Shown: piece after piece, positions 1,983-28,387 of the stretch | Numbering within the stretch: position 1 is the first letter of the stretch | Layout: every line of letters starts with the position of its first letter | Assembly (NCBI GenBank): GCA_047495785.1 | Contig: JBLDXI010000011.1 | Coordinates: 558,001 to 622,000, forward strand | DNA length: 64,000 nucleotides | Reading direction: 5' to 3' | From: Lepidodermella squamata | Taxonomy: Eukaryota > Animalia > Gastrotricha | Made by a program: the position numbers and the translations under genes | The notes under the pieces: generated by a model | The model's database searches: none | Told to the model about the DNA's origin: nothing | What the model saw: the letters and a program-made list of their open reading frames with translations, nothing else

Positions 1983-4205
1983 ATGGCGTCTACACCTTAC
2001 AAGTCTATGTCTGAGTTCACAATAGTCAAACTACTGGGCCGCGGTGGCTTCGGATCCGCGTGGCTATGCAAGCGCAAGAACGACTTTGCGGAGTATGTAG
2101 TGAAAGGAGTCAGTCTATCCGAAATTCGGCGTAGATACATGGGCAATGAAGAGTTGGCCGAAAAACTTATCAACATGGCCAGAAAAGAGGTACGATTTGT
2201 TTCAATCAAGTTCTTGAAATATTGAAGATCTGATTTCCAAAGCACCTAAATATGACGAAATTCAATCACACAAACATTGCCCGAGTCTTCGGAGCTTTTG
2301 AAAGTAATCAAATTTCCAAGATTTGAGACATTCCGGCATGATATGTTCACCCTCAGGCTTGAACGAAGACGTAGATGCTGCGAGGAAGGGCGATTTGATG
2401 TACTACCTGGTCCTGGAATTTTACGAGGGCGGCGATTTGAAGAAGTACTGCGAGAAGGCAGCCAGCCCAATACCTGAAGTGTTAATTCAGAAATGGTCAC
2501 GTCAACTCGTTTCGGCCGTCACGTTTTTGCACGACATCGAACTTGTACATCGCGACATCAAGCCGGAGAAAATTTTGTTAACTGGCGATGGGAAAAACGT
2601 GAGACTAGGCGATTTCGGGATAGCTAAAATTTTCAATCCGTAAGATAAAACCGTAAGATATAAGAGATCGCCAGCTTATCGAATTTTACTTATTGCAGGG
2701 AGGCCGCAACAACGTTTACTGGCGTGGCTACGTGGATTTACGCCGCTCCTGAGATTTTCGACGGCGAGCGACATACACCAGCGAGCGATTGGTGGTCGCT
2801 CGGCGTTACGTTGTTCGAAATCTCGAATTTCATAAAACCTGTAATTTATTTAAGATTTTGAGAAATTAAATCAGGGTTAAACTGTTTTTCAGTTTGACAC
2901 TCAACTCGCCATCATAAAGTAATTTGGTAATAATTGCGGAACCGATTATTTCGTTAAATTTGTTGCTAAGCAAACCTCCTAAACCATTCGATCAATCTCG
3001 AGGCTATTCAAGCGAATTTCGATATTTTGTCTTGTCGATGATTGAGAAAGATGTTCATCGCCGAGCGACTGCAGATCAGCTTCACAAGAGCAGTTTTCTG
3101 CTTAAAACAGCCAAGGCGGAAGCTGCTGATCGCCAGTCTGAAACTCCGGTAAAACAACCTCTTAAGCGCTTTATGGATTGTTCAAGGATTCATGTAATAA
3201 CAGGAACCAGCTATTATTTACCCTGGTAACCCACAGGTACTTTGTTGGCTCTTTGATTCTCATTGATTCTTGAGACAGCCATTGTGCGATTTACAGGTGC
3301 TCATCGAATGCGTGGCTGCGAGAAAAGACCTACCCAAATTGGTGCAACTCTTATCAGACAGGAGGCTCGGATTGAGCGCCGACTGTAAAGACAAAGACGG
3401 AAATCCGCTACTGTTACTTGCTGCTCTAAATGGCTATAATGACGTTGTGGAAACTCTGGCAGGCCAGTTTAAAGCCAATGTTGAGGCAGCCGATCAAGAT
3501 GGACGTACACCACTGTACGTCGCCGCCAGGAATGGCAACGTCGAGCTTGTGAGAACGCTGGCTGGCCGGTACAAGGCCAAAGTTGAGGCAGCTATAAGAA
3601 ATGGCTGGACACCATTGCACATCGCCGCCGCGAATGGCCATGTCGAAGTGGTGAAGACGCTGGCTGGCCAATTTAACGCCAATGTTGAGGCAACAATGAA
3701 AGACGGCTGGACGCCATTGCACATCGCCGCCAGGAATGGCAACGTCGACGTTGTGAAGACGCTGGCTGACCGGTACAAGGCCAATGTTGAGGCAGCCGAT
3801 AAAGATGGCGCAACACCACTGCACATCGCCGCCGGGAATGGCCACGTCGAGGTGGTGAAGGCACTGGCCGGCCAATTTATTGCCAATGTTGAGGTAGCTG
3901 ACATCAATGGTTTTACACCACTGCACATCGCCGCCCAGAATGGCCACGTCGAGGTGGTGAAGACACTGGCTGGCCCATTTAACGCAAATGTTGAGGCAAC
4001 CGAAAAACACGGCTTAACTCCGTTAATGGCCGCTGCGGTTTACGGCCAACACGCGGTAGTCGATACGCTGGTCAATGCATTTCGAGCAAATGTCAGAGCG
4101 GCCTGCAAAAAGGGGAAAACCGCTTTGAGCTATGCGGTTAACTGCCCCACGACTGTTACAGCCGCGAACAAGCAAAAAACAATTGATATCCTGTTAACAC
4201 TTTAA
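1983..4205 (+). CDS. NEK-like Ser/Thr kinase fused to C-terminal ankyrin repeats (copy 1, near-canonical kinase, 7 full ANK units plus caps); exons approx. 1983-2189, 2243-2303, 2357-2639, 2699-2840, 2893-2918, 2971-3148, 3204-3236, 3297-4205
   Basis: LGRGGFG, YVVK, HRDIKPEKILL, LGDFGIAK, YAAPE, SDWWSLG and YSSEF..FVLSM motifs joined in frame by ~52-60 bp GT-AG introns; 34-aa GxTPLHxAAxxGHVEVVKTL repeats. Confidence 0.9.
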
Positions 4206-4712
4206 CTGCCCAAATTAGACTGCGAGATCCGATATTTGGAATTAGGATCCAAACCTTGGGTCTGTCGAAAAGTCCTTTTTCGGGTCAGCGCTGCGTCGTA
4301 GGGCAAAATGGCCGACGGCAAAGTGTAGGCCATGACCCGGCGGTTCTTTTGACACTTGACACCGAATTTAGGGCCAAAGACTTCAAGGAACGCACAGAAA
4401 TCAACTTGTAAAAACAGTGAAATTTCGATTGTTGCGCCATAATCTGGGTCTAATAATTAGGTCCAATTCTTGGGTCTCCTTTTTGGCTCTCATCCAAAAT
4501 TTCGACGTTTTTTCACCGTCATTATCAAAGACCTGCTCAGACCTTGAGTCCCCAAATTCGGTGTCAAAAGAACCGCCGGGTCATGGCCTACACTTTGCCA
4601 TCGGCCATTTTTCCCTACGACGCATCGTTGACCAGAAAAAGGGACTTTTCGACAGACCCAGGATTTGGATCCAAATATCTGATCTCGCAGTCAAATTTTG
4701 GCAGTTAAAGTG
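4198..4712. mobile_element. Non-autonomous piggyBac-like MITE with long TIRs and TTAA target duplication
   Basis: TTAA 4194-4197 and 4713-4716; termini CACTTTAACTGCC...GGCAGTTAAAGTG; imperfect inverted arms of roughly 170 bp. Confidence 0.88.
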
Positions 4713-5541
4713 TTAACGCGGTGGGGGCTCTTCTCTTTTTAGCCAAGACCCCTTTTCAGACCTTTTGACCAACCGGGGACGATCAGAATGAGGATAAAAT
4801 TATATCTACTGGGGTCTGGGGTTCCTGTTGGCACTTGGTACAGATCACGGGCGGAATTTTCTGAAAACCCTATAAATAAGGAAACATTCATGCATGATAA
4901 TGACTAAAATGGTATTATTCATACAAGAGTTTGCCTTGGATTACACCAGTTGGGCTTTTTCACGATTCTACGTGTTTTTCCAGCCAACTCGCATAAGAAA
5001 GTGACATCCGCGGCGGGACAGACTTCCGACCAAGCTCGCCAGGGAGGCGTCCTCGGCATTACTTTCAAGCACTGCTTATGGCTCATAAAATATTCATGCC
5101 ATTCATTTATTTGCTGTATTGTGGCTTTACCGATTTTCTCAGAATCATTTCTGTTGGTTTTAATTTGCTCTCAAATTTACATGTTTAACCACTAACTTCT
5201 TTAATAAATGGAAAATATAAAAGAATTTCGTTGTAGCCGTTTGTTCTTTCCATCATTTTAGCTTTCTTAACTCCGAGATTTCTATAGCTTTCAGTCCCTG
5301 TTTTCCATTTCGCAAGATGAGTAGCGAAATTACATAGTCACCGTTTATTATGACAAGCGGCTATTTTTGAAAGCGTCAAAACCATATCAGTGCGTAGGTT
5401 GGAAAGAACCCTTAGCCCGCGCTAGCTTCTTATCATCGTAATTAACGACTATAAACATTGGTGCTCAAATTATCTACTTACGTTAACTTGCATAGCCATA
5501 GCATCCTATTAATTTTGAGAAAATTCGTCAGCTGCTTGGAG

Positions 5542-8500
5542 ATGGCATCGCCCTACTCGTTCCGATCTATAGCTGAGTTCACGGACTTTACCCGTTTGTC
5601 GAGTAACTCCGAGAAACTCCTCCGAGGCATGTGACGTAGATAGGACGCCGCACTAAGAGGTTTTCGGACACGAAAAACTGAAGTCAGACTAATAAGGGGC
5701 AAAGTTCATCTTTTCAAATTTAATAAGATGAATCATCTCATTATTTTCCACCCAAATATTTCTCTTGCTATTTCTGTGTAATTTTGAGCAGATGGTGCCA
5801 TTTCATCAGCTTAGTTCATCTTTAAAGATGCATCTCCTCTTTGTTTCGTCTCGGAAACCGCGCCAAATCACTACTTTTTGCGATCTTCGAAACTTGAACT
5901 AATTAATTTTAAATTTTTAAATTTTAATTATTAAACAATTTCAAAATGAGCCCCACCATTTTATTTTTTTTAAGCTGCAAATTATTCTGAATATTAATGA
6001 GGAAAAAAGTGAACACGTCTTCTTGTCTTCTGGCGTGCTCTGAGTGCGGCGTCCTATCTACGTCACATGCTCCGAGGTGGATATTCATGCCAACGCAATG
6101 AGTGCTATCCTTACGAGTTTGTCATTAAAAAAGCTAATTTGACCAAGCTGCAGGAGGAATTCGAGAAAGACTTTGAAACAATCGCTCGACTTCTCCGCGA
6201 AAAAGTAAGGAATGTGCATATCTTCGACATGGCATCGTTTATGCTGATTTATCCTATTTTCAGGATTCGATGATGGTAAAAATTAACCATCCAAATATTG
6301 TCCGAGTATTTGGCACGTTCGAAGGTTCGGAAATCATTCTCTCACGTAAAACTCATCCACTCGATTTGTTTTAGAGGCATACCCGGTTAGTGACGTTGCT
6401 TGTTATAAGCACTCCATGCACCATTTGGTGATGGAGTTGTGCGGCGGTGGGAGTTTCGAAACTCTGATCAAAGCTGGAGGTGAGCCGATTCGCGAAGTTA
6501 GGCTTCAAAGTTGGTCTCGCCAGCTCGTTTCGGCTTTGCATTATCTACACAAGCGAGACATGGTACATGGCAACATTAGGCCAAGCAATATTCTGCTGTC
6601 GAAGAACCAAGGCACTGTGAAACTGGGAGAACTAGGAATAATGGAAACCTTTAATCCGTAAAGCCTCCAGTTTTGATTTTTAATCTAACTTCCATCCGTA
6701 ATATTTCAGAAAATCAAAAACGAGTTCTCTATCGCAAGAAATGCGTGACTATTGGCCACCTGAAGTATGGAATGGTGCGCGAATGTCACAAGCTGGTGAT
6801 GTCTGGTCGCTGGGTGTTACGCTTTACGAACTCGCAAACTGCATAAGACCAGTATGACATTGACAAAACCACAAAACCCTAAAAGTTTAGCATAATTTAT
6901 TTTACGTAGTTCGACCTAATGCACAAGGTCATGACGTAAGTCAAATTCAGTCTTACTGCTGCAAAGTGAAAAGTGTATCTTGGTGAAATTATTTCACATT
7001 TCGAGATAAGAAATAGTTCACTGTGCCTATAGCGCCGCCCGGCGGAGGGCCTATTATAAATAAAACTAACACATGCTGAGATAAGAAAGAGTTGGTGGCC
7101 ATGGCCCGTGGCATATATCCCAAGTCTATACGCGAAAACCGATAGACGAAATACCTAGAATGATTTAGTTTTCGAACTTAGTTATGGCTCGCGAATAAAC
7201 ACTCTTAACTTTGCAGCAGTCACCTGAAATAACTCAATCTCGAATCTGCCTTGTTTAGACGCGAAGCTCAGCCTTTCGACGAGTCTCGTGGTTATTCAAC
7301 ATATTTCCAAGAATTTGTAATGTCCATGCTAACTAAAAATGCCGAGGTTCGACCGAGAACTGATCAGCTTTTAAACGACAGATTTTTTCTAAACCAACCG
7401 ACGAAAAATGTGAGATTTTGCCAGATCGAAATGAGTATTACGACGGTGCTTTCTTCCTGTTTTTTTCAGGCGGATTCCTCCACAACACCTCAACCAGATG
7501 AAAAGACTGTTCAGGTATTGAATAAACTAACGCCGAGCAAACTGATGCGTTGATTTCACTTGACAGGAGTTATTTGACTGCGTGTTGGCGAAAGATGAGT
7601 CGAAATTAGTGGAGCTGCTGATGAACAGGGAGCTCGGTCTTAGCTCTTACTGCAGAAACGAATATGGGGCTACATTACTGCATATAGCTGCTATCAAAGG
7701 CTACAACGACATTGTGGAGATCCTTGTCAGGCAATTCAACGCCAATATTGAGGCAGCCCTTGAAAATGGCACTACACCATTGTACATCGCCGCCAACAAA
7801 GGCCAAATTGAGGTTGTGAAGACATTGGCTGGCGAGTTCAACGCAAACGTTGAGGCAGCTGATAATGAGGGACGAACACCCTTGTACGTCGCCGCCCTCC
7901 AAGGCCACGTCGAAGTTGTGAAGTCACTGGCTGGCCAATTTAACGCTAATGTTGAGTCAGCAGATAAAGATGGCTGCACACCATTGTACATTGCAGCCCT
8001 CCAGGGCCATGGCGAGGTGGTGAAAATACTTGCTGGGCAGTACAGCGCCAATGTAGAGGCAGCCGATGAAGTTGGACGTTCAACACTGTTCGTCGCCGCC
8101 TTGGAAGGCCACGTCGAGGTTGTGAAGACACTGGTTGAAAGGTTCAAAGCGAATGTTGAGGCGACCAACATAAATGGTGCTACACCATTGTTCATCGCCG
8201 CCAAGAATGGACAAGTCGAAGTTGTAAAGATTCTGGCTGGCCAGTTTAACGCCAACGTAGAGGCAGCCATTGACGATGGCGCCACACCGTTGTACATCGC
8301 CGCTGAGAATGGTCATGTCGAAGTTGTGGAAACACTAGCTGGCCAGTTCAGCGCCAATGTAGAAGCGGAAACCAAATTGGGTGCTACACCGTTGCACGCC
8401 GCCGCCTTTCAAGGCCACGTCGAGGTTGTGAAGGCACTGGCTGGTAGGTTTAAGGCAAATGTGGAGGCAGCCATTAACGATGGCGCTACGCCGTTGTACA

Positions 8501-9303
8501 TCGCTGCCGAGAATGGTCATGTCGAGGTTGTGGAGATACTAGCTGGCCAGTTCAACGCCAATGTAGAAGCCGCAGCCATATTGGGTGCTACACCATTGCA
8601 CGTCGCCGCTGTCAAAGGCCACGCCGAGATAGTGAAGACACTGGCTGGTAAGTTTAAAGCCAACGTTGAGGTGGTCAATGCGAATGGCGCTACACCACTG
8701 TACTTCGCCGCTTGTTTTGGCCACGTCGAAACTGTGAAGACGCTGGCTGGCGAGTTCAGCGCAAACGTCGAGGCTGCCTACAGAGATGGCACTAGGCCTA
8801 TACACGTTGCCGCCATCCAAGGTCACATTGAGGTGGTTAAGACATTGGCTGGTCAGTTCGGGGCCAATGTTGAGGCAGCCGATGGAGATGGTCGGACAGC
8901 ATTGTTTATCGCTGCAGAAAAAGGCCACGCCGAGGTGGTGCAGACACTCGCTTCCCAGTTTAAAGCGAATGTTGAGGCGGCCAATAAATGGGGCGCTACG
9001 CCACTGTACGTCGCCGCCGGCTTCGGCCACGCCGACTTGGTGAGGATACTGGCTAGCCAGTTTGGTGCCAATGTTGAGGCAAGGGGTGAAGATGGCCTCA
9101 GACCGTTAATGGCTGCTGCTTTATTCGGTCGACACGTAGTAGTTGATATGCTGATCAATGAATTTCGAGCTGGTGTCAACGCGGCCTGCAGTGAAGGACA
9201 TACCGCGCTGCATTATGCTAATAAGCATAACTGCTGTTTGCCTGTTGCAGACGAGGACAAGCGGAAAGTAATTGAAGTCCTGAAAAAGGCGAATGCTAAA
9301 TAA
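5542..9303 (+). CDS. NEK-like pseudokinase-ankyrin fusion (copy 2, 15 ANK units); exon 1 interrupted by a MITE
   Basis: MASPYSFRS...KLLRG|GYSC, HPNIVRVFG, HGNIRPSN instead of HRD, GELG instead of DFG, YWPPE, DVWSLG; same intron positions as copy 1; open ANK exon ~7567-9303. Confidence 0.75.
5628..6069. mobile_element. 442-bp MITE with ~32-bp TIRs and 8-bp TSD (hAT- or P-like)
   Basis: TSD CTCCGAGG at 5620-5627 and 6070-6077; TIR CATGTGACGTAGATAGGACGCCGCACT / AGTGCGGCGTCCTATCTACGTCACATG. Confidence 0.93.
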
Positions 9304-10228
9304 CAATGTAATTTGACGATTGCGAAAGATTTGATTTGATTTGATTTGCCATGGCGTTTTGGAAAATTTGATTTGAAATGATTGATTAAAGAAGACCTGT
9401 GATTTACTGAATAAATGAAGACAAATCAAAGTCTCTGCTGCATTCATTGATTTTTCCAATATCAAAATTCTGAAAAGCTGAACATTGATTTTTATTCTGT
9501 TTCTACCCGGTACTCAAATTTAAACGCTGATGTTGTCTCGGACTTAATCGCCAACGATATCTAGGGCTAAAAAGTGAAAAATGTCGAAGATGAATAACTA
9601 GGTTTCACTTGTTTGCGCTTGCTATCTATTTCGCAAGATAAAATAACATTTCTTGTGATAAACATTCATTTTGTAACTATCGAACTATATGTTGTTTCCC
9701 TAAAATTGTCGGGCTGCATTCTTTAGGGCGTAGCAGCTTGAAAATATATAATAAATAAATGAACCATATCAGTGGCTCAGGTTCAAAAGTTCGCTCGCTC
9801 TAGCGTCTTATCACTGTAACATAGAGAAAAAATTATAAAATGAGAAATAGGGTCACTTTGTTCTCTATGCACTGTAACCAACGGCATAAGGAGCATTGCT
9901 GTTGATATTACCCTGCTAATTTAGCTTATATAGATTATAGATCATGCCTTTTTTATTTTGAGAAACATCTTTAGCTGCTTGGAGATGACATCGCCTTACT
10001 CGGTTGTATCAATGGCCGAATTCACGGACGTTAAACCGTTGTTGCCCTACGAGAAACTCCTCAGAAACGGATATTCATGCCGACGCAATGGGTCCGAGTT
10101 TGTCATTAAAAAAACTAATCTGACCAAGCTGCGGAAGGAATTCGACGTTGAAACAATTACTCAACTTCTTCGCAAACAAATAAGGAATACGCCTTTTTTC
10201 ATTTGCATTCTCATTTTGTGCAAAACTA

Positions 10229-10749
10229 CCGTATATGCCGAATTAATATCCTGAGTATCTTATTGTTTCAAAACAACCAAAAAACGGGGGCTTATTCAGG
10301 CTGGGGTCCAAAAATGAGCTGGGGCACTATTTATTGCAATGTAAGTTTGAAGGTTCTTAGCACAAATAGAATCAGAAGAAATTGAAAGTTCATGAAATCA
10401 AATCCCAAATTTCATCGAATCTTTCATCGAAATTTCGTTTTTTTTCATCTTCTTCCGCGTTTTTTTCGATGATCAGGAAGATTTTCTTAATTTTCCTCGC
10501 CTTAAGAGCAAAGTTCTCAAGTTTTAGATGAATTATTTCTCGCAATTAATATTCGCAAACGATCTTTCGGCCAGTTACGGGGTTCGTAATTGAAAATTAA
10601 TGCAAAATATCATTGCGCGGTGTTTCAATTTGTGTCGCGGGCTGCAATTGTAGGCGTGGGTTCTTATTGTTTCAAACGACCTGAAAACTGGGGGCTTAAA
10701 CAGGCTGGGGAATTAAATTGAGTATGGGATAATAATTCGGCATATACGG
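10229..10749. mobile_element. Tc1/mariner-pogo-like MITE with TA target duplication
   Basis: TA|CCGTATATGCCGAATTA ... TAATTCGGCATATACGG|TA; internal subterminal direct repeat TTATTGTTTCAAA...GGGGGCTTA..CAGGCTGGGG. Confidence 0.85.
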
Positions 10750-11152
10750 TAATTTCACAGGTAGTTTTTTCTTCTCCTCTGCGTCTTCATTTGCGTTTTT
10801 CATTTTCTTACTCCTTTTATTAAAAGAAACCAAGAAAACTAAGACAACTAATTTTCGATGATTATGATTAAAATTAAAGCTCTTAATAATATTTATTCAG
10901 CGATTAAGTTGGCGGCGTCAGAGAAGACTATTTTATTTGAAAATCCAGCCTCAAAACCAGTTTATTTCCGGGGTACGTGTAACAAACAAAACCGATTGCT
11001 GCATGGTTCATGGTTGAAAACTTCGTGCCGAACATTTAATAAATCGAAGTGGCCCCTAATTTCGGCGGTTTTTTAAGCAATTAGTTCGGGATTTAGTTGG
11101 GACATATTTCTTATCGAAGAAAAACTTCAGCAAACAAATAAAAACGTTTACA

Positions 11153-11225
11153 GGCTGTGGGATTTGAACCCTTCTTCACGCGTTCCACGCCCAGGCTCTC
11201 ACACAACCTACTGTCTTGGCAATTG
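11153..11225 (-). other. tRNA-derived (Pol III B-box) fragment, possible SINE head
   Basis: Reverse complement contains GGTTCAAATCCCACAGCC; no full cloverleaf recognised. Confidence 0.3.
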
Positions 11226-12725
11226 TGATCGATTTTTTGCTACTTGACTTGTGCTCCCTAAACCCTAAGCGAATAATTGATTAAGCATCGAAAACTGAAA
11301 ACTGCGTTCGGATTGCTATTGAGAAGACTTGGATGTGGACATTTTATTGTTACGTCTATTATGTTGTTTTCAGGATTTGAGTATGATGAAAATTAAGCAT
11401 CCAAACATTGTCCGAGTATTTGGCACGTTCGAAGGTTCGTTTGATATGCGCTCACGTGAAACTCATCCCAAAATTGTATTTCAGAGGAATACCGGGGTGG
11501 TGACGTCGCTTGTTCTAAGCACTGGATGCACCATTTGGTGATGGAGTTTTGCGGGGGCGGGAGTTTCAAAACTCTGATCGAAGCTGGAGGTGAACCGATT
11601 CGCGAAGTTAGGCTTCGAAGTTGGTGTCGCCAGCTCGTCTCGGCTTTGCATTATCTACAAAATCGAGGCAGTGTCCATGGCAACATTAGGCCAAGCAATA
11701 TTCTGCTATCGAAGCACCATGGCACTGTGAAACTGGCAGAGTTGGGAATTATCGAAACCTTCGACACGTAATGCCATCAGTTCAGATGTGATGATTTTAC
11801 ATCAATTTTATCTGTAACATTTCAGAAAATCAAAAACTATTCTTCTATTACAAACAATGCGCAGCTATTTATCACCCGAAGTATGGGATGGTGCGCCTAT
11901 GTCAGAAGCTACTGACGTCTGGTCGCTGGGCGCTACGTTTTACGAACTTGCTAACTTCAAAAAACCTGTATGATATTTAATTAAAGTTGAAATTTGAGCA
12001 TAAATTATTTCAAATAGTTCGACCTAATGCACCAGATCCAGACGTAAGTCTAATTCAATCTGACCGCTGCAAAGGGAAAAGTACATCGAGGCAATTTTTT
12101 TGATATTAGCTCATAGGGGTGTTGGCCATGATATCCTAAGTCTATAGTCGAAGACCATTGGTCAAATTACATCACAATGACGGAGCTATCACGTACAGAC
12201 AGAGTTGTCCATGGGTCGGGTCTTCAATTATAGACCGAGGACAACTCTGCGTACATGAGACCTACGGTGTGATTCAAAAAGGTTGCCCACCGCATCATAT
12301 AGGCACGTGTTCTAATCTTGGCTTTAGCGGCCTTTCTGATTCACACTGTACTAGGAAGCTGGTGCTAGAATCCTCCCAACCAAAAATCTCTGGCTGGACT
12401 CCATAGAATTTTATAGATTTGTGGGATCGTTGCGAATAATCTAGCCACTAGACCATTGTTTTCCCCCGCGAGATTCATTCTACAGATCGTCGACTTATAG
12501 CAGCTGATCGTCGACTTAAAAAAACTGCAAATCTTCCACAAAATTAAATTTAAAATTTAAAACACTCTTTACGCATGTGTCACTGATATCAAATTTATGA
12601 TAAAGGTCATAAGAAAGTAGGATATTAAGGGTATGTCGAGAGCGTCCATCCAGCGTTGAGAAATTAAAATCTCAGCCGTTTATTAGTCAAGAGTTTAGAT
12701 TCGTCAAGATACTGCAAGTTACACT

Positions 12726-13064
12726 CATTGTGCTTGAGCTAAATAGTAGAATTTCTGCGGGCGCGCTGATTGGTCAATCGATCGTTGCTATGACTCCCGG
12801 ATGAAACATGTTTGTTGTGCGATCCATGAAATTTTTTGCAACAAGTGTTTTTTGCCGCAGTAAATTGCTACGATTATTACGGGGTTTACGCTCGTTGTCA
12901 ATGGAAACCGTGCAGCGGGTGTGGCAAGGTCATTTTTTGCATAAATACAAAATAATTTATCAGTGGATTGCACGACTAAATTGTTTTATCCCGGAGTCGT
13001 AGCAACAATAAATTAACCGATCAGCGCGCGGGTCAAAGTGCTACTTACTACTTGAAACACAATG
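12726..13064. mobile_element. Palindromic MITE in an intron of copy 3
   Basis: Termini CATTGTG...CACAATG; inverted arms CGCGCTGATTGGTCAAT..GTTGCTATGACTCCCGGATGAAACA; absent at the homologous position of copy 2 (ACACT|CTT). Confidence 0.7.
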
Positions 13065-15025
13065 CTTGCAGCGGTCAGTTGGATAATTTAATCTTGAATC
13101 TTTCTTGTTCAGAATTGAAGCTCATGGTTTCGACAAGTCTCGTGGTTATTCAAAAGATTGCCAGCAATTCGTAATGTCCATGCTAACGAGAAACCCCAAG
13201 GATCGCCCGAAAACTGATCGTCTCATAGAAAACAGCTTTCTACTGAAATCAACAGCGCAAAAGGTGAGATTTAACGGTTCCCAAACTTTCCGGTTTTTAT
13301 GACATGGTAGTTTCCTATGACCAGGCCTAGTAGGACAAGAGTAGGGCACCATTTAAAATATTGAAATTAGATTGGAAGATGGGAGAATTTTATAAGCTAA
13401 GGATTGCTTGTTAACCTTTTCATAGCGATATTATTTATATGCAGGAGAAAACATATTTTACAGCAGATCTAGAGGTTTTCAAAGGCCCTGATCCCAATTT
13501 TGAAATCCATTTGTCTTTATCTATCACCGTTAAGACTGCACGATAACTGGCCGATCTCGGCCTATCCGCCAAGCTTTTTTCAGGCGATTTTTTGAGCACC
13601 CTAATTTCCGTGTCTGGTGCTTCCAGTTTTAAAATTTTAGATTCTAAATTACTCCCATGAATGTACATGATTCTACCTCGCTTATATCATCGAAAAAAAT
13701 TCAGTTTAAAAAGAAGTTTTGGAGGCTTAGAATTCAGATCTGAATTAAGCTTTTCCAGTTTTTCTCGCGACAGTTTTTGCGGCACAAAAATCACGCACTC
13801 CGCCTGTTTAAGTTTTGGCGGATAGGACGAATTCGGATTTCCAACTCAAATCATTAAAACAGAGGTAAATGAGACAATGGAGGACACGGCGGTATTTTTT
13901 GTTGAATCAAAAAATGATCGGAAACCTATGGATTATCTAGTTTAACCAAATCATAATTCTAATCTCAGGTTGGCTATTTTCAAATTGCTAATATGCCTTG
14001 GCCACGCAAGATAACGGTGTCCTGGTCTCAAAACCTTGTAGCCAGAATTAAAATAGAATATTCCTCAAAAGACCGATCAAGATTTCATCAAATTCAATTT
14101 TCTGCGAATTCTTAAAGTCGAAATTTAAAGATATCAACCATTTACTCATGTTATAAGCATACAAATATGGAACAATTTTAAGACAAATGTCATTGGGGAA
14201 TGTTTGTTTTTTTAAATTAAATTACCAAAAATGACAAAAGCGAGTGTTTTCTAGACATTACTTTTGGTGATTTTGGGGGTGTTAAGGGCTCGCCGTGATT
14301 GTGTCCATTCTGAAAGCATTGCGTTTCTTCAGGCCACAACGAACATATCACGACAACCGTACGAAAACGATGTTCAGGTATTGAATGAAGGAACGTAGAA
14401 CAAATTGAAAAGTTGATAGTGGTTATGCTTTACAGAAGTTATTTGCCTGCATGCGGGCGAATGATGTGTCGAAATCAGTGGAGCTGTTGGCGAACCCGAA
14501 GCTCCGTCTTGGCGCTGACTGCAGAGACACAGATGGAAAGCCTTTACTGCACATCGCCGCCCAGAATGGCCACGTCGAGATGGTGGAGACACTGGCTGGC
14601 GAGTTCAACGCCGATGTTGACGCAGCCGACATACTTGGCCTAACCCCGTTAATGGTTGCTGCATCATTCGGCCGATACGCAGTAGTCGATACTCTGATAA
14701 ATAAATTTTTTGCAGATGTCGACGCGGCAAGCAGTAAAGGATCTAATGCTCTGTACTATGCTCATTACTGCTCTACACGTGTTAAAGCCGAGGACAAGCG
14801 AAAAACAATTACACGCACTCGTTTCACGCCTACACAATAAAAGCTATACTACTGCGGTCTAGTTTTTTGTTCATTCACAAGAGGTTTTCGATTTCAAACA
14901 GCACCTCTATTTCTTATAATTGTTTTAATGCCAATCTATTCTCTGAGTTTTCTTAAAATCGTTTTTTTCAATTCAAAATCGGGATTTAGGATTTCACAAT
15001 TTGTGGGCAATTTCTTTTTAGGAAA

Positions 15026-15445
15026 ATGTCTAAGCATGAATCCGGCTCTCTGAAACGAAAAGAGAAGCGAGAGATGAGGCCGATTCAAACTTTCTTTCAA
15101 AAGTTCCAACATCATTCGCATTTGGCTTCGCTAATCTAGCCCCGCTTTCCGATGCTAATAATGAAGTCGACGTTGAACCTCAAAATAACCAATTCGAAAT
15201 TCCATCCAATCTGAAACTGGAGGTGGTGAATCAATTGAGTCCATTACAGTTAATTTAGATGACCCTTTCTTTTGGTCGCCAAATGACGCCGAGGCTTTTT
15301 TTAGAAAAGGAATTTCATCTGTTCACAAAGCCACCACTGCCAACATCGATTTTAATGCAACGAAAAGAAGTTTCGGAAACTTTTCTCGTGCTTTAACTCC
15401 TGAAATGCTGCGTTCATGTTTGCCTAATGGCGAGGAGGCGCCTTG
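15026..15445 (+). pseudogene. Possible degenerate N-terminus of a hAT (ZMYM1/TTF-type) transposase
   Basis: MSKHESGSLKRKEKR..IQTFF, LDDPFFW and CLPNGEE in shifting frames resemble hAT N-termini; recognition by eye only. Confidence 0.3.
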
Positions 15446-16239
15446 AAATTATTTGATTTTCTTTGAAATTATTTTGATTTGATTTTGATTTGATCTTCAC
15501 AAATGCTTTTTTGCTCCGTTTGCAAGTTATTTTCGGATAGCGCCAATATTTTGATGTTATAGCACCCGTAACCCGAGTGAAATAAGGAATCCCGAGCATG
15601 AAATTCGGACATACAAGGACTGCAAAAGCCTCATACCCATACGCCAATGAATAACTGGAAATGGGCCACTATCTTCAAAATTCAAGGAAGTTCAAGGGAA
15701 AATGGAAATTTCAACATTTCGATATTTGGAAAAATTGATTCTCAAAATGTCAGCAAATTTTCTACGTTTAATTCGCAAAGAAAAATGTCATTCTCCACTG
15801 TGACTGCTAAATATAAAACGGCTACGACGATGTACTGAGATGTATTGACGTTATTTCCCCGCCGCGAGTGAGAAAGTCCAACGCATTGCCTCTAACGGAT
15901 CTTTTCAAATCGTGGGCGGTTGCGAAGCGGCAGATAAAGGAAGCGAAAAGTCCGTTTTTTAGGAAAAAGATTTTTCTTATAACTTACGGCCCGTTTACTT
16001 TTCTTATCGCAGTCTTATCGCGTTGGAACCCCATCTAATCGACTAAAACAAGACTAATCATCAACAACAGGATGATTAGGATAAAGCCGACACATGTCGG
16101 AGGTGACGTCTGGCGTATAAAAGCAGTTCCAATCTAAAATATTTCGCTTCAAACTTTCAACTTAGGATGTACATTCCCGAAAGATTTTTTTCACTGCATT
16201 CACTTTTGCTTTTGCGTAGATCGCGCCTTTTAATATCAA

Positions 16240-18676
16240 GAAACTTCTTTAGCTGCTTGGAGAACTGATCAGCTTGCAAACGATAAATTTCTACTGCACC
16301 CGACAGCGAAAGAAGACATGATGGTGAGATCAGATCAGGAGGATGAGTATGATGCATTCCTCCATCTGTTTTTCAGGCGGACTCCTCTGCAACCAAAACA
16401 CTACCACAGCCAGATGAAAAGGCTGTTCAGGTATTGAATGAACTAACGTCGAAAAAACTGATGCGTTGATTGTGATTATACTTGACGAACTCGCGAACAA
16501 TAGAAGACCAGTATGTCATCGGCTTGACGTTGAAACTTTTGCGTAATTCAAGTATTTTATGCAGTTCGATCCAACGCACATGATCTTGACGTGAGTCACG
16601 GTTCAATCTGGAATAACTAAATTTTAAATATGTATTGCGTAGACTTGAAGCTCAGCCGTTCGACGCGTCTCGTGGCTATTCAACAAATTTCAAGGAATTC
16701 GTAATGCTTATGCTAACTAAAAGCGCCGAAGATCGACCTAAAACTGATCAGCTGTCAAATAACAGTTTTCTGCTGAAAGATGTGAGATTTCAGGTCAGAT
16801 CAGGATTAGGAATACAATGGTGTTTTTTCAGGTCAATTCCTCGACGACAACAGTTCCTCAACCGGACGAAAAGGCTGTTCAGGTATTGAATGGGGAAATG
16901 TCGAACAAACTGATCTTATTGCGTGATTATACTTGACAGGAATTGTTTGAAAGCGTGCGGGCGAACAATGGCTTAAAATTACAGGAGATGCTGATGAACA
17001 GGGAGCTCGGTCTTAGCTCTGACTGCATAAACAAAAACGGGGCTACAATACTGCATCTTGCTGCTCTTAGTGGCTACAACGGCATTGTGGAGATCCTAGT
17101 CAGGCAATTCAACTCGAATGTTGAGGTAGCCCTAAAAAATGGCGCTACGCCATTGTACGTCGCCGCCCTTCAAGGCCACACTCAGGTGGTAAAGACACTA
17201 GCTGGCGAGTTCAACGCAAACGTTGAGGCAGCTGATAATGATGGACGAACACCATTGTACGTCGCCGCCCTCGAAGGCCACCTCGACGTCGTAAAGATCC
17301 TGGCTGGCCAATTTAACGCTAACGTCGAGTCAGCAGATAACGAAGGCTATACGCCAGTATATGTCGCCGCCTTCGAAGACCATGACGAGGTGGTGAAGAC
17401 ACTTGCTGGCCAGTACAAGGCCAATGTAGAGGCGGCCGATGAAGACGGACGTACGCCATTGTGGATCGCCGCCGCGAAAGGCCACGTCAAAGTTGTGGAA
17501 ACACTAGCTGGCCAATTTAACGCCAATGTTGAGTCAGCAGATAAAGATGGCGCAACACCATTGTACGTCGCCGCCTTCGAAGGCCACGTCGAGGTTGTGA
17601 AGACATTGGTTGACAAGTTCAAAGCGAATGTTGAGGCAGCGAATATGAATGGCGCTACACCATTGTTTATCGCCGCCAAGAATGGGCAAATCGAGGTGGT
17701 AAAAACATTGGCTGGCGAGTTGAAAGCAAACGCGGAGGCAGCCCTTAATGATGGCGCCACACCGTTGTACATCGCTGCCGAGAATGGCCATGTCGAGGTT
17801 GTGGAGACACTGGCTGGCCAGTTCAACGCCAATGTTGTAGCGGCAACCATATTGGGTGCTACACCATTGCACGTCGCCGCCATCCAAGGCCACGTCGAGT
17901 TAGTGAAGACACTGGCTGGTATGTTTAAAGCCAATGTTGAGGTGGTCAATGCTAATGGCGCTACGCCACTGCACTGCGCCGCCTGTTTTGGCCACGTCGA
18001 AACTGTGAAGACGCTGGCTGGCGAGTTCAGCGCAAACGTCGAGGCAGCCGTGAAAAATGGCGATAGGCCTATACACGTTGCCGCCATCCAAGGTCACATC
18101 GAGGTGGTTAAGACATTGGCCGGCCAGTTCGGGGCGAATGTTGAGGCGGCCAATAACAATGGAGCTACACCATTGCACTTCGCCGCCCAGGAGGGCTACG
18201 TCGAACTCGTAAAACTGCTGGCTGGTCAGTTCGGGGCCAATGTTGAGGCAGCCGATGGAGACGGCCGGACAGCATTGTTTATCGCTGCAGAAAAAGGCCA
18301 CGCCGAGGTGGTGCAGACACTGGCTTCCCAGTTTAAAGCCAATGTTAAAGCGGCCAATAAATGGGGCGCTACGCCACTGTACGTCGCCGCCGCCTCCGGC
18401 CACGCCGAGGTGGTGAGGACACTGGCTAGCCAGTTTGGTGCCAATGTCGAGGCAGCCTGTGAAGATGGCCTCAGACCGCTAATGGCCGCTGCGTTATTCG
18501 GCCAACACGTAGTGGTCGATATGCTGATCAATGAATTTCGAGCTGATGTCAACGCGGCCTGCAGTGAAGGACATACCGCTCTGCAGTATGCTAATAAGCA
18601 TAACTGCTGTTTGCCTGTTGCAGACGAGGACAAGCGGAAAGTAATTGAAGTCCTGATAAAAGCGAATGCTAAGTAA
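16240..18676 (+). pseudogene. Rearranged kinase-ankyrin copy 4: most of the kinase deleted, intact 15-unit ANK exon (~16940-18676)
   Basis: Pre-ATG sequence AGCTGCTTGGAGA joined directly to GAGAACTGATCAGC (kinase end); second jump at ~16485 into sequence near-identical to 20771-21300; 577-aa open ANK frame resembling copy 2. Confidence 0.75.
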
Positions 18677-19925
18677 CTGAGCCACAAATGCGCATTATTT
18701 GTCATTTTCAGAATCATTTGCACAGATCGTTGATTTTACGTTTTCCTGCTAATTTCATTATAATAAGAGTTCATTATCAGAGTTGACCATCAGCTCAGAG
18801 CCGACATCGATTCAAAGTATCGATTTTTATTGATTTCGCCAATAATATAAAAATTATTGAAGGCCAAACATTGCAGTTTTTACGCAGCTAATGGGATCCC
18901 AAGTAGCTAAAAAAGGCCTGGGACACAGGAATAATCGGAATCATCCGGATTTCACAAAAAGAAATCACGAAAACAAATTATACCAGCATGCGGGCACTCC
19001 AGATTTCTGAGATGCCGATTTGGAATATGAAACGGCGTTGGATGTAAAGGATGAAAGGGATAGATGTAAGGGACTCAGACACGAAGGAGTGACGATCCCC
19101 GACTCTGACTAAGATTCTTACGGAGTTGAGAGCCCCTAGGTTGGGGCAAGAGTCGACCTGACCCGGCTAGACCTCAGAAAGTTTCCCAAGTCTAATTGAT
19201 GTTCAACCCCACTACAAACGGAATATCATCGACGTCATGATCCTCGATGTGGTTTGCTACCCACTCCTTCGCTTCGGCGGCATTCAAAGAACTATAGTTT
19301 CTTACGAGCGAGTCGTCTTGTCAACCTTTGACTTTGTCGCGGTGCTTTTGCAAGGCTTTTGTGGTACGTGAAATTATGAACCTGTTTCAGCGACAGCTTT
19401 GCTTTCTCTTGGAAACAGTCAATTCAATTTGGACAAGGTGTATTATGGTTGTCTGTTGAATGCACAGTTCAATGCTCAAGGCGCTGCATCAACGCTCAGA
19501 CGGACAAGGTCTGCAGCTTTTTCCTAACGCGCTTGAATCGTATCCGTTAAGTGAAAGATGGAATAATTATTGTTCATTCCTAGGCTGGTCAAGGTGGAGA
19601 CGCTGTCAACATCGTTGATTCAGATGAAGCGTCAGTTAACTTCAACGGATGTTTCCCGATAAATTATTAATTTTCACTTTTCACCGCTTGCGTTCTATTT
19701 CGCAAGATGAATAATAAAAACCCATCATTGCTTTGTAACACGGGACAAATTTCTCAAATATAGAAAGTCATATCAGCGGCAAGACGCCTCCGCCCTTGCT
19801 TGCTTCTTATCATCGAAACCAGCGGCAAGAAAAATTGGTGCTGATAGTATTGTCTACTATCTTTCACTTACATAGCACCGGCTTTATTGCCCTTAATTTT
19901 GAAGAAGTTCTTCACCTGCTCAGAG

Positions 19926-22754
19926 ATGGCATCGCCCTACTCGTTTGGATCAATGGCCGAGTTCACGGACGTTAGGCCGTTGTTGCTCAACGAGAAACTC
20001 CTCAGGAACGGATATTCGTGCCGACGCAATGCGTGTTACCCTTTCGACTTTGTCATTAAGAAAACTAATATGACCAGGCTGAAGAAGGAATTCGAGCAAG
20101 ACTTTGAAACAATTTCCCAGCTTCTCCGCGAAAAAGTGAGGAATTCATCCATTTTCAAGATCATTGGACTGCTAACAACTCGCCTTTCACTTCGTTTTCA
20201 GGATTCGAGAATGGTCAAAATTAACCACCCAAACATTGTCCGAGTATTTGGCACGTCGAAGGTTCGCTTGTAATGCGCTCACGTAGAACTTGCCAACAAT
20301 ATTGTTTCAGAGGAAAACCAGGGTGGTGAAGTCGCTTGTTTTAAGCACTCCATGTACCATTTGGTGATGGAGTTTTGCGGGGGCGGGAGTTTCGAAACTC
20401 TAATCAAAGCTGGCAAAGCTGGAGGTGAACCGATTCGCGAAGTTACGCTTCAAAGTTGGTCTCGCCAGCTCGTCTCGGCTTTGCATTATCTACACAGCCA
20501 AGACATTTTACATCGCAACATTAAGCCGAGCGATGTCCTGGTTTCGCAGAATCAAGGCACTGTGAAACTGGCAGAGTTAGGAATAATGGAAACTTTAAAT
20601 ACGTAAAGCCATCAGTTTGGAGTTTTAATCGAAATTCCAGCCGTAATATTTCAGAAAATCAAAAACAACTCCTCTATGGCAATCAATGTACGGCTATTTG
20701 CCTCCTGAAGTATGGAAAGGTGGATCCCTGTCACAAGCTGGTGACGTCTGGTCGCTGGGTGCTACGCTATACGAACTCGCGAACAATAGAAGACCAGTAT
20801 GTCATCGGCTTGACGTTGAAATTTTTGCGTAATTCAAGTATTTTATGCAGTTCGATCCAACGCACATGATCTTGACGTGAGTCACGGTTCAATCTGGAAT
20901 AACTAAATTTTAAATATGTATTGCGTAGACTTGAAGCTCAGCCGTTCGACGCGTCTCGTGGCTATTCAACAAATTTCAAGCAATTCGTAATGCTTATGCT
21001 AACTAAAAGCGCCGAAGATCGACCTAAAACTGATCAGCTGTTAAATAACAGTTTTCTGCTGAAAGATGTGAGATTTCAGGTCAGATCAAGATTTGGAATA
21101 CAATGATGTTTTTCAGGTCAATTCCTCGACGACAACAGTTCCTCAACCGGACAAAAAGGCTGTTCAGGTATTGAATGGGGAAATGTCGAACAAACTGATG
21201 GGCTTATTGCGTGATTATACTTGACAGGAATTGTTTGAAAGCGTGCGGGCGAACAATGGCTTGAAATTAGAGGAGTTGCTGATGAACAGGAAACTCGGTC
21301 TTCGCTCTGACTGCAGAAACATTGATGGGGTGCCTTTGCTGTTCCTCGCCGCCTACAATGGCTACGTCGAGGTTGTGAAGCTTCTAGCTGGCCAGTACAA
21401 GGCCAATGTAGAGACAGCCACGAATGATGGCAGAACACCATTTTGGACCGCCGCCTTCAATGGCCACGTCGAGGTTGTGAAGCTTCTAGCTGGCGAGTAC
21501 AAGGCCAATGTTGAGGCAGCCATGAATGATGGCAGAACACCATTGCTCGTCGCTGCCTACAATGGCCACGTCGAGGTTGTGAAGCTTCTAGCTGGCGAGT
21601 ACAAGGCCAATGTTGAGGCAGCCACGAATGATGGCGCTACACCATTGTTCGCCGCCGCCCAACAAGGCCACGTCGAGGTTGTGAAGCTTCTAGCTGGCGA
21701 ATTCAAGGCCAATGTAGAGACAGCCATGAATGATGGCGCTACACCATTGCACGTCGCCGCCTACAATGGCCACGTGGAGGTTGTGAAGCTTCTAGCTGGC
21801 CAGTACAAGGCCAATGTAGAGACAGCCATGAATGATGGCGCTACACCATTGCACGTCGCCGCCTACAATGGCCACGTGGAGGTTGTGAAGCTTCTAGCTG
21901 GCGAGTACAAGGCCAATGTTGAGGCAGCCATGAATGATGGAGCTACACCATTGCACGTCGCCGCCCAGGAAGGCCACGTCGAGGTTGTGAAGCTTCTAGC
22001 TGGCCAGTACAAGGCCAATGTTGAGGCAGCCATGAATGATGGCAGAACACCATTGCTCGTCGCTGCCTACAATGGCCACGTCGAGGTTGTGAAGCTTCTA
22101 GCTGGCCAGTACAAGGCCAATGTTGAGGCAGCCATGAATGATGGCAGAACACCATTGCTCGTCGCTGCCTACAATGGCCACGTCGAGGTTGTGAAGCTTC
22201 TAGCTGGCCAGTACAAGGCCAATGTTGAGGCAGCCATGAATGATGGCAGAACACCATTGCTCGTCGCTGCCTACAATGGCCACGTGGAGGTTGTGAAGCT
22301 TCTAGCTGGCGAGTACAAGGCCAATGTAGAGACAGCCATGAATGATGGAGCTACACCATTGCACGTCGCCGCCCAGGAAGGCCACGTCGAGGTTGTGAAG
22401 CTTCTAGCTGGCCAGTACAAGGCCAATGTTGAGACAGCCACGAAAAATGGCAGAACACCATTGTGGACCGCCGCCCAGGAAGGCCACGTCGAGGTTGTGA
22501 AGCTTCTAGCTGGCGAGTACAAGGCCAATGTTGAGGCAGCCACGAATGATGGCGCTACACCATTAATGGCCGCAGCATATAACGGCCAACACGCAGTAGT
22601 CGACACACTGATAAATGAATTCCGCGCAAATGTCAACACGGCCCGCAATGATGGACAAACCGCTCTGAATTTTGCTAACAATTGCTTGCCTCGTGTTACT
22701 ACCGAGAACAAGCGGAAAACAATCGAAATTCTCGCGAAGGCGAATGCAAGATAA
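19926..22754 (+). CDS. NEK-like pseudokinase-ankyrin copy 5 (13 highly homogenised ANK units); 1-bp deletion in exon 2
   Basis: HRNIKPSD, AELG, YLPPE, DVWSLG; exon 2 (20202-20261) is 60 nt versus 61 nt in copies 1-3; other splice sites canonical; open 507-aa ANK frame. Confidence 0.7.
21325..22650 (+). repeat. Coding 102-bp tandem repeat (ankyrin units), with three identical copies at 21972-22277
   Basis: Unit GGCCACGTCGAGGTTGTGAAGCTTCTAGCTGGC...GCCTACAAT recurs at 21972, 22074 and 22176. Confidence 0.95.
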
Positions 22755-23410: not shown

Positions 23411-24012
23411 TGCAAAATTAATCAGCCAGCTCCAATTTCGTCAATTTTGATAGGTTCTGGACTGTGTTTTAGTGGAAAATCTTCACAATTTTCTCGCTTC
23501 TCGGTTATTCGCCAAAATAACTAGTAATTTTGGCCAATACAGCGAAAAAAAATTTTCCATCACTGGCAGCTCCTGGATCGCACCTTGTAATAGAGACCTT
23601 AAAGTAAACAATTGAACGCGACCGGTTTCTCCGCTCTAATTTGGTTGAGATTTCTTCGCTATTAGGCTAAAATCTATGCTAAAATTTCCCAGTTCTCCAC
23701 ATTTCTCTGCAAAATTAGGTCAAATTCGGTCCTAAATCTGTGCTGTTAATTAACCATCATTTTTTGCAACCAGAAATCAATCAAGTTGCGAAGATTGGAT
23801 ATAGCTCTTAAGTAAATACAGCCCATCTACATGGGTAGCAACTACTCGTCTTGAATATGTTCCCGGCGTGTCATTAATTTTTCAACAGGCTTCTGCAGAG
23901 ATTTTGCCCGCCATCAATTATTCACAATTCGCCACTCAGCTATACTGCACGCCCTATTCCCCTGCTGTGTCACAGATCAAATAATTCACGATTTTGATAC
24001 CAGCAGAAAATT

Positions 24013-26804: not shown

Positions 26805-28387
26805 ATGTGTTTAAAATTAGTGATAATTTTGGCAATGGTTTTCGGTTGTTTTCTCGATTCTTCCGAGGCTCAGGATGACCCGACCGGGTTGCGGCTCATT
26901 CACCCGAGGCTGTTAAATTGGCTATATGGCGAGACGGCGACTATGCCGACTACGACGCGATTCGCCCCAGGATCGAGCGGCGATGATACTGATAACGAGA
27001 AAAATTGTGGGAATACAACTTACCCGATTAAAGGCTACCCTTGGACGGTAAAATCCCAAATATCACACATCGAGCATCATAAAAAAAATCGGAAATTTTT
27101 CGTTGAAATTTCAGCAGATTTATAGAGAATATTTTCAGAAAATTCCCGATTTTTCAAAACAATAATTCACATTTTTTGAAATTTTTTGTCTAGGTTATGA
27201 TAGCGCTGTATTACAATCAAACTCAATGGACGTGTTCGGCAGTTTACCTGGGCAACAGGTGGTTTTTGACGAATGCCAACTGCCTAGCAAGATGGCTGTA
27301 CTTCATGTAAGGAATTGTCTTATTATTGCTTGGAAATTTTAGAAAAAAAAGAAATAAATTTCGGAAATTCAGAAATTTCAAATTTTAATATCATTATTTA
27401 AAATTTGGCAATTTATTTTAATTTTTTGGGTAAATTTAAATTTTGAAAATATTTTTTATTTAATTGTTTTAGGACCGGTTATCAAAACAAGATTCAGATA
27501 TCGCTAATTTTCCAAAACGACGCATCAGCTAGCGAAAATTTTGCCTTCGTCAACGCTCTGACAATCACGCACCCTAAATATGTCACCGAATCAGTCGACC
27601 GTGTCGCATCGCGGCAATTCGACTTTACGCTGTTGAAAACGTACGACCTGCCTAGGTACGTATTTCGAGGCCAGTTGCAACACATTTGCCTGCCGGATGA
27701 GACTGTACTGTGCAAATTGATGGAGCTGGGCGATCAAGCGTGCCAGCAAACAATTTCTACAGGGTGGCCACAAACGTCTCAATACCCGATCCCACGGCTT
27801 AATATGACAGTTTTAGGTAACATTTCATGCCTGGAACTTAATTTGAAAATCCTAATTTGAAATTTGAAATTTTCAAAATTTTTAACTTTTTCCTTTCATC
27901 GAAATTTCAAAAATATAAAAAAAATAAATAAATAAAAAATAAATAAAAAAATCCGAAATAATTTTGAATTTTTTTTTAAATTTTCTGAAAATTTCAAGTT
28001 TTTTTTGAAAAAATCATGTAAATTCAAGAAAATATTTTTTTACAATTGTTAGATAGCTTATCAATTCAGCCTCGGAGTAATTGCAACACAGCGGCCTATC
28101 AAATAAATACCGGCACGTCGCAAATTTGCACGAATTTGACGTATTCTGAATTTTTACGCTGGCCCAATCAAGCGTGGCCGCTGTATTGCAGCCGGCCAGA
28201 CGATGCGGCGTACAGTGACGGGAACACTGATTTCATCGAACGGCGTAAATTGTACGCTATAGGCTTGGCTGCTCAGGCCGTTCGATTGAGGGACAACACA
28301 ACGGTGGCTAATATGGTCTACAACAACATTTGCAACGTTCTGCCGTGGATTAAAACAACAATTGAAAATAATGACAAAAATTCGTGA
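26805..28387 (+). CDS. Secreted trypsin-fold (S1) serine protease homolog, catalytically inactive; 4 exons (approx. 26805-27047, 27193-27306, 27473-27817, ~28052-28387)
   Basis: Signal peptide; YPW, CSAVYLGNRWFLTNANC (TAAHC His to Asn), HPKY, FDFTLLK, ICLP, TGW, WPNQAWPLYC (no GDSGG), VLPWI. Confidence 0.8.

What the first reader, a model, noticed from the sequence alone, without database searches (positions are those of the whole stretch)
1983..22754. Tandem NEK-kinase/pseudokinase-ankyrin array resembling a variable intracellular receptor system
Seen: five tandem paralogs with a shared intron-exon pattern. Copy 1 has GxGxxG, HRD, DFG and APE. Copies 2, 3 and 5 lack the Gly loop and have HGN/HRN and ELG, so they are pseudokinases; copy 4 has lost most of the kinase. 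All ANK units sit in one exon as 34-aa modules numbering 7, 15, 2, 15 and 13. Known: NEK-ankyrin fusions with many inactive kinases are a hallmark of Giardia, whereas typical animal kinase-ANK proteins (RIPK4, ANKK1, ILK, DAPK) are not NEKs. Inference: a lineage-specific sensor (pseudokinase-ANK) and executor (active kinase) family, possibly innate immune or allorecognition, arising convergently in an animal.
Basis: partly seen in the sequence, partly recalled or inferred. Interest (0 to 1): 0.9.

Follow-up and report, generated by a model that had tools for sequence, protein, structure and literature searches.

The report
NEK-like kinase/pseudokinase-ankyrin tandem gene array
Five neighbouring genes of a tiny invertebrate (probably the gastrotrich Lepidodermella squamata) join a NEK-like kinase or a dead copy of it to a variable row of ankyrin repeats that swap modules between genes, a design so far described mainly in the parasite Giardia; most copies here are damaged, and an immune role is a guess.

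Summary
The array is real: five paralogs with one eight-exon plan, each ending in a single-exon ankyrin array of 7, 15, 2, 15 and 13 full 34-aa modules. Copies 2, 3 and 5 encode dead kinases. Only copy 1 has an unbroken frame, and it has Lys in place of the Mg-binding Asn (HRDIKPEK), so 'active executor' is doubtful. Copy 2 has a polymorphic transposon in exon 1, yet spliced transcripts exist. Copy 3 has lost a splice donor, copy 5 has a 1-nt deletion, and copy 4 is a three-part mosaic. The ankyrin framework is conserved (dN/dS 0.22). Binding-face positions change about 3.5 times faster, but at about the neutral rate (0.78); only copy 5 hints at an excess (p about 0.04). Modules and whole cassettes move between paralogs. 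NEK origin rests on one database relative (best solved hit NEK1); an exon-only tree is unresolved. Best reading: a birth-and-death family of variable-binder kinase adaptors. Immunity and sensor/executor pairing are untested. The scan met this family before at many other loci of this genome.

The parts
1983..4205 (+). Copy 1: 8 exons (1983-2189, 2243-2303, 2357-2639, 2699-2840, 2893-2918, 2971-3148, 3204-3236, 3297-4205), open frame of 612 aa; NEK-like kinase with Gly loop, beta3 Lys, HRD, DFG, APE but Lys at the catalytic-loop Asn; 7 ANK modules plus caps
   Evidence: splicing inferred from signals and paralogy, not seen in RNA
2569..2571 (+). Lys codon in place of the conserved Mg-binding Asn of HRDxKxxN in copy 1
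   Evidence: relative P0157 has Asn there
4198..4712 (.). Multicopy non-autonomous TIR element with TTAA target duplication; it supplies copy 1's stop codon
   Evidence: summed depth 11,000-13,000 against 46-80 in single-copy DNA
5542..9303 (+). Copy 2: pseudokinase (HGN, ELG, no Gly loop) plus 15 ANK modules; 885 aa if the exon-1 insertion is absent or removed; exons 6-7-8 (7259-7409, 7470-7514, 7567-) seen spliced at 100% identity
   Evidence: run X2, record 14
5620..6077 (.). TIR element (5628-6069) with 8-bp target duplication inside copy 2 exon 1; gives an early stop if retained; its right end offers an in-frame ATG at 6067; a GC..AG splice would remove it exactly; an empty-site version exists in run X1
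   Evidence: (joint 5619-6070, 8 shared letters)
9985..14840 (+). Copy 3: pseudokinase (HGN, ELG) plus 2 ANK modules; intron-1 donor at 10180 is AT; three introns swollen to over 1 kb; C-terminus altered; probable pseudogene
16245..18676 (+). Copy 4: mosaic remnant. The leader is joined to the end of exon 6 and exon 7 of a copy-2-like gene (16245-16486), then a 98-100% copy of copy 5's exon 4 end to exon 8 start (16487 to about 17000), then a copy-2-type ANK exon with 15 modules; no start codon
19926..22754 (+). Copy 5: pseudokinase (HRN, ELG) plus 13 highly homogenised ANK modules; exon 2 (20202-20261) is one base short, which shifts the frame unless a second AG two bases downstream is used as acceptor

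Best explanation
A lineage-specific, birth-and-death family of cytosolic 'variable-binder' kinase adaptors. SHOWN: each gene joins a NEK-like kinase or pseudokinase to a capped ankyrin solenoid whose framework is conserved while the beta-hairpin and inner-helix positions vary. Modules are gained, lost and exchanged, and a whole ANK exon has moved onto another kinase chassis (copy 4). Copies die by transposon insertion, splice-site loss and frameshift. INFERRED: the solenoid's concave face binds a partner protein that differs between paralogs. The dead kinase domain acts as a scaffold or switch that passes binding on by dimerising with a catalytically competent family member. That member need not be copy 1 and may be encoded elsewhere in the genome. 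The partners most likely change fast (proteins of intracellular parasites or microbes), which would explain why new binding faces keep arising and old ones are discarded.
For: Framework dN/dS is 0.22 against 0.78 at the six binding-face positions in 13 paired modules of copies 2 and 4 (surface vs framework p about 3e-7). Variable positions lie in the hairpin loop and helix 1 of the model. Module gain, loss and cross-gene matches and the cassette swap are visible in the sequence. Pseudokinase exons were under purifying selection (dN/dS 0.44-0.57, p<0.02). Copy 2 is transcribed and spliced. Copy 5's near-identical modules show more surface replacements than silent changes per site (10 vs 7 events, p about 0.04). 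The same signature marks fungal NLR ANK domains (PMC4986451).
Against: Surface dN/dS does not exceed 1 in the cleaner test (0.78, not different from neutral). The copy-5 excess is marginal and inflated by multi-base block exchanges. Four of five copies carry lesions in this haplotype. The branch counts for copies 3 and 5 look near-neutral (20:7 and 13:5 replacement:silent). No ligand, partner, induction or population data exist. No NB-ARC/NACHT or death domain was found in the exons scanned.
Confidence: 0.4

Rival explanations
1. Mostly neutral turnover. One or a few functional kinase-ANK genes keep duplicating. Single-exon repeat arrays recombine for mechanical reasons, surface residues vary only because they are less constrained, and this cluster is largely a graveyard.
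For: Surface dN/dS 0.78; lesions in copies 2-5 and Asn-to-Lys plus a TE-derived end in copy 1; near-neutral branch counts in copies 3 and 5; of the 16 listed coding differences of a second copy-1 version in X1, 12 are replacements (a partial list).
Against: The dead-kinase lineage is old (long branch, 100/100 clade), and its exons stayed under purifying selection after losing catalysis. The ANK frames are all open with strongly conserved frameworks, and copy 2 is expressed.
Confidence: 0.28
2. Endogenous targeting. The ankyrin array is a built-in localisation or activation subunit, as ANKS6, ANKS3 and INVS (MLT-2, -3, -4) are for animal NEKs in trans and as proposed for Giardia Nek-ANKs. Paralogs address different sites in cilia, cuticle-forming epidermis or cytoskeleton.
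For: NEK kinases need ankyrin-repeat partners for localisation in C. elegans and mammals (PMC7048319). Deleting an ANK repeat relocalises a dead Giardia Nek (PMC3218828). The family's best solved relative is NEK1.
Against: Endogenous partners should fix the binding face and the repeat number. Here modules are homogenised, shuffled and lost fast, and most local copies are broken.
Confidence: 0.25
3. The lesions and the mosaic copy 4 are artefacts of whole-genome amplification or assembly.
For: If the source is the L. squamata assembly, it came from one MDA-amplified animal, and MDA forms chimeras (PMC11660948). Copy 4's junctions have 2-4 nt microhomologies, and I could not lay reads across them.
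Against: Copy 4 differs from both local 'donors' (1-2% from copy 5; 4-20% and different module content from copy 2). The transposons have clean target duplications. RNA contigs match copy 2 at 100%. The paper found no chimeric contig in that assembly.
Confidence: 0.07

Closest known systems
Giardia lamblia Nek/ankyrin expansion (Manning et al. 2011, PMC3218828)
   Same: N-terminal Nek-like domain plus runs of ankyrin repeats; most copies catalytically dead; rapid gain, loss and pseudogenes (GL4 subfamily).
   Different: Animal host, intron-containing genes, 34-aa modules of another consensus, no sequence link to Giardia found. That paper saw the Nek-ankyrin association in no other species, so convergence is inferred; no tree tested it.
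Fungal NLR ANK domains with high internal conservation (Dyrka et al. 2014, PMC4986451)
   Same: Homogenised ANK arrays, repeat-number differences, variation on the concave face and hairpin.
   Different: No NACHT/NB-ARC domain here. Positive selection and repeat-number polymorphism between individuals were shown in Podospora but not here.
Animal NEK-ankyrin partner complexes (NEK8-ANKS6-INVS; NEKL-MLT, PMC7048319)
   Same: A NEK kinase working with ankyrin repeats.
   Different: There the parts are separate, conserved, single-copy genes; here they are fused, multiplied and partly dead.
RIPK4, ANKK1, DAPK1, ILK, RNase L (own knowledge)
   Same: Kinase or pseudokinase fused to ankyrin repeats; RNase L and ILK couple ANK binding to a pseudokinase scaffold.
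   Different: Other kinase groups, fixed repeat numbers, single-copy; ILK and RNase L have the ANK part at the N-terminus. None ranked among the top kinase hits.
Cereal tandem kinase proteins with integrated domains; Arabidopsis ZED1/RKS1 and Toxoplasma ROP5/ROP18 (own knowledge)
   Same: Kinase-pseudokinase cooperation in recognition; clustered, variable pseudokinase genes.
   Different: Unrelated kinase families, no ankyrin arrays; function shown there, only analogy here.
DARPins (engineered)
   Same: Capped consensus-like ANK solenoid with variation at the same positions; among the best solved matches.
   Different: Artificial, 33-aa modules; natural ankyrin-1 fits the model at least as well, so the fold match itself is generic.

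Membership tests
NEK (NIMA-related) kinases | Kinase domain is closer to NEKs than to other groups in best-hit tests | tested here: inconclusive
   Relative P0157: best solved hit NEK1 at 88 bits, next GCN2 at 72; best named hits are NEKs at 34-39%. The window's own exons tie NEK1 with Chk1, CDPK and others.
NEK (NIMA-related) kinases | Groups inside the NEK clade in a kinase-domain tree | tested here: inconclusive
   Exon-3-only tree with 92 columns: backbone unresolved. The whole-domain tree needs the joined model and was left out.
Active protein kinase (copy 1) | beta3 Lys, HRD Asp, DFG Asp, Gly loop, alphaC Glu | tested here: met
Active protein kinase (copy 1) | Mg-binding Asn of HRDxKxxN | tested here: not met
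   Lys at codon 2569-2571; whether other alleles have Asn could not be read
Active protein kinase (copy 1) | Measured phosphotransfer | not testable with these tools
   needs an assay
Pseudokinase (copies 2, 3, 5) | Loss of catalytic Asp and DFG Asp | tested here: met
   HGN/HGN/HRN and ELG, no Gly loop
Pseudokinase (copies 2, 3, 5) | Maintained and expressed as protein rather than a pseudogene | tested here: inconclusive
   dN/dS 0.44-0.57 and spliced copy-2 RNA contigs, but each copy has a 5' lesion in this haplotype
RIPK4/ANKK1-type kinase-ANK orthogroup | TKL/RIPK-type kinase domain | tested here: not met
   No RIPK among the top 60 solved hits for exons 1, 3, 4 or P0157; ANKK1 hit only through its ANK part and dropped out of the exon-3 set
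Giardia Nek-ANK family | Orthology with diplomonad Neks and TALM-type ankyrins | tested here: inconclusive
NLR-type immune receptor | NACHT or NB-ARC domain | tested here: not met
   Pfam finds only kinase and ANK families in the exons scanned
Diversifying recognition receptor | dN/dS above 1 at binding-face codons | tested here: inconclusive
   0.78 in the copy 2/4 module pairs; copy 5 excess p about 0.04
Diversifying recognition receptor | Allelic or repeat-number polymorphism between individuals | tested here: inconclusive
   Versions 2-4% divergent and an empty transposon site occur in X1, but contigs cannot separate alleles from near paralogs or count repeats
Diversifying recognition receptor | Ligand binding or induction by microbes | not testable with these tools
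   no data

The most novel reading that the evidence does not exclude
Gastrotrichs have an NLR-independent intracellular recognition system. A germline library of natural DARPin-like binders, renewed by module and cassette exchange, sits on NEK-derived pseudokinases that signal through an active family kinase. It would have arisen independently of the Giardia expansion.
Probability: 0.2. Interest if true: 0.85.

Novelty: new variant of a known kind. Interest (0 to 1): 0.5.

Why it matters
The Giardia kinome paper reported the Nek-ankyrin association in no other species, and its function is still open. A culturable animal with an apparently independent, intron-containing version gives a comparative handle on why this design expands. 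If the arrays bind non-self ligands, this would be an undescribed kind of invertebrate intracellular receptor and a natural source of shuffled ankyrin binders, in a phylum for which my paper search found no study of immune gene families. If not, it remains a clear case of pseudokinase birth and death.

Tried and rejected
ANK-exon search: only generic ankyrin proteins, at most about 49% identical; no close kinase-ANK relative. Exon-3 search of 1.84 billion representatives: one family member only, P0157 from a Logan contig, which shares the intron-3 position. The contig ends before any ANK exon, so the fusion is unproven there, and its sample could not be identified. Metagenome scan: six unrelated kinases. 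A neighbouring GalNAc-transferase did not identify the taxon. The exon-3 tree was unresolved, and its paired RSK rows are near-duplicate pieces and should be ignored. All-against-all module dN/dS was set aside because the pairs are not independent. 'Copy 1 has seven exons' was rejected after finding the 33-nt exon. Efficient splicing-out of the copy-2 element was judged possible but unlikely: it needs a GC donor and a GAG acceptor, and none of 31 modelled acceptors is GAG; no such joint was among the 15 of 79 joints shown.
Full report
Source. The window is animal DNA with introns of about 50-60 nt and 42% GC. It probably comes from the gastrotrich Lepidodermella squamata. The scan lists 1993 windows on 147 pieces, and the published assembly is 122 Mb in 157 contigs at 43% GC (PMC11660948). 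The best run, X1, shares a 2024 study with a 101-Mb run of another organism, which fits that paper's second species, C. elegans. This is inference, not a sequence match. If it is right, X1 is the source read set of one amplified animal and is not independent support.

Observation. Five same-strand paralogs sit between two ammonium-transporter genes. They share an eight-exon plan. The last exon holds an N-cap, then 7, 15, 2, 15 or 13 full 34-aa ankyrin modules, then a C-cap. The model of copy 1's ANK exon is a confident solenoid (pLDDT 93.5) that matches ankyrins and DARPins. Copies 2, 3 and 5 lack the Gly loop and have HGN, HGN or HRN and ELG; they form one clade on a long branch (100/100).

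State of each copy. Copy 1 is the only unbroken frame (612 aa). It passes the usual three-residue test for activity, but it has Lys where HRDxKxxN has the Mg-binding Asn, and AT for GT in the P+1 loop. From established kinase chemistry this should weaken or abolish catalysis. Its stop codon lies in a TTAA-flanked TIR element. Copy 2 has a 442-nt TIR element with an 8-bp duplication in exon 1. X1 holds a version without it (joint 5619-6070, 2 differences in 257 nt), so the insertion is probably polymorphic. Run X2, guessed to be RNA, has a contig that joins exons 6, 7 and 8 with no mismatch in the two listed pieces (record 14), so copy 2 is transcribed and spliced. How exon 1 is handled is unknown. 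Copy 3 has an AT donor and enlarged introns. Copy 5 lacks one base in exon 2; a second AG two bases into exon 3 would restore an 814-aa frame, but its use is untested. Copy 4 has no start codon. It is a mosaic of a copy-2-like tail, a 98-100% copy of copy 5's exons 4-8 start, and a copy-2-type ANK exon, with the switch near 17000.

How the arrays evolve. Copies 2 and 4 both have 15 modules but different ones: copy 2 has a two-module duplication, and copy 4 has two extra modules, one closest to copy 5's. Copy 5's modules are up to 100% identical. Variation concentrates at module positions 1-3 and 5 (hairpin) and 9, 13 and 14 (inner helix region), largely the positions randomised in DARPins (own knowledge). 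In 13 paired modules of copies 2 and 4, dN/dS is 0.22 in the framework and 0.78 at the six pre-chosen surface positions. The contrast is strong (p about 3e-7), but the surface rate does not differ from the silent rate (p 0.26). In copy 5, surface replacements exceed silent changes per site (10 vs 7 events, p 0.04), but several are multi-base block changes that suggest conversion, so the count is inflated. The dead-kinase exons have dN/dS of 0.44-0.57. By branch, copy 2 looks constrained (11:9) and copies 3 and 5 look relaxed (20:7 and 13:5; small numbers). X1 has versions 2-4% divergent from copies 1 and 2, while a 613-nt intergenic piece differs at one site. Contigs cannot tell alleles from near paralogs.

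Kinase group and relatives. No close relative is annotated. One Logan protein, P0157, is the best match to exons 1-3, has an intact catalytic loop and shares intron 3's position and phase. So the kinase family occurs in at least one other sample, apparently another species. Its best solved hit is NEK1 (88 vs 72 bits) and its best named hits are NEKs. The window's own exons do not separate NEK from other groups, and the exon-3 tree is unresolved. 'NEK-like' is fair; membership is not proven. RIPK-type origin is not supported.

Mechanism. Shown: variable ankyrin solenoids on kinase or dead-kinase domains, renewed by duplication, module exchange and cassette swapping, and lost by transposons and small lesions. 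Inferred (0.40): the solenoid binds a paralog-specific and probably fast-changing partner, and the dead kinase relays this by pairing with an active relative. That relative may lie elsewhere: earlier scan notes, unchecked by me, describe intact-kinase and kinase-pseudokinase-ANK genes at other loci. Rivals: neutral turnover with relaxed surfaces (0.28); endogenous targeting, as with the NEK-ANKS6/MLT partners (PMC7048319) and Giardia Nek localisation (PMC3218828) (0.25); amplification artefact (0.07).

Comparison and novelty. The closest known case is the Giardia Nek-ankyrin expansion, with 71% dead Neks and fast turnover; its authors saw the association in no other species. The repeat dynamics resemble fungal NLR ANK domains (PMC4986451), but the genes have no NOD domain, and the selection and polymorphism shown in fungi are not shown here. 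I found no paper describing such a family in an animal. Verdict: real, a new variant of a known kind, function untested; the sensor/executor immune model is a hypothesis, and this cluster is largely decaying. The scan has reported the same family at many other loci of this genome.

Noticed in passing
window:5620-6077: TIR element starting CATG with an 8-bp target duplication. Its ends form a GC donor and an AG acceptor that would remove it exactly (introner-like), and its right end gives an in-frame ATG. Summed depth in X1 suggests dozens of copies.
   Followed up: partly
window:5525-5541, 9968-9984, 16245-16262, 1950-1982: A conserved pyrimidine-rich AG lies about 10 nt (27 nt in copy 1) before the start codon; possible trans-splice acceptor. 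In copy 5 it is changed to AC, with a new AG just before the ATG.
   Followed up: no
window:4681-5175: Intergenic DNA between copies 1 and 2 is held at 100% identity in the RNA-guess run X2: a long 3' UTR, an outron or DNA carry-over.
   Followed up: no
window:1-1200 and 23998-26601: Ammonium-transporter genes flank the array on both sides on the same strand; the array may have grown inside an older tandem.
   Followed up: partly
window:33335-35062, 38803-41226, 45871-48240, 51298-54390: Several nearly intronless class-C GPCR-like genes (ANF_receptor, 7tm_3), two of them near-identical at the start and on opposite strands: a local receptor expansion.
   Followed up: partly
window:43007-44380 and 27447-28384: Open frames with no Pfam match.
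   Followed up: partly
window:31744-32677, 58364-59437, 62742-63666: Cys-rich, probably secreted multi-exon genes, repeated at least three times.
   Followed up: no
L001:1-602: In the relative's contig the kinase starts about 120 nt after the stop of an upstream intron-containing gene (operon-like spacing) and lacks introns 1 and 2 of the window's copies.
   Followed up: partly
window:2072-7857 (run X1): Window-like contigs have depth about 46 and divergent ones 65-80; heterozygosity, polyploidy or near-identical paralog clusters could each explain this.
   Followed up: no
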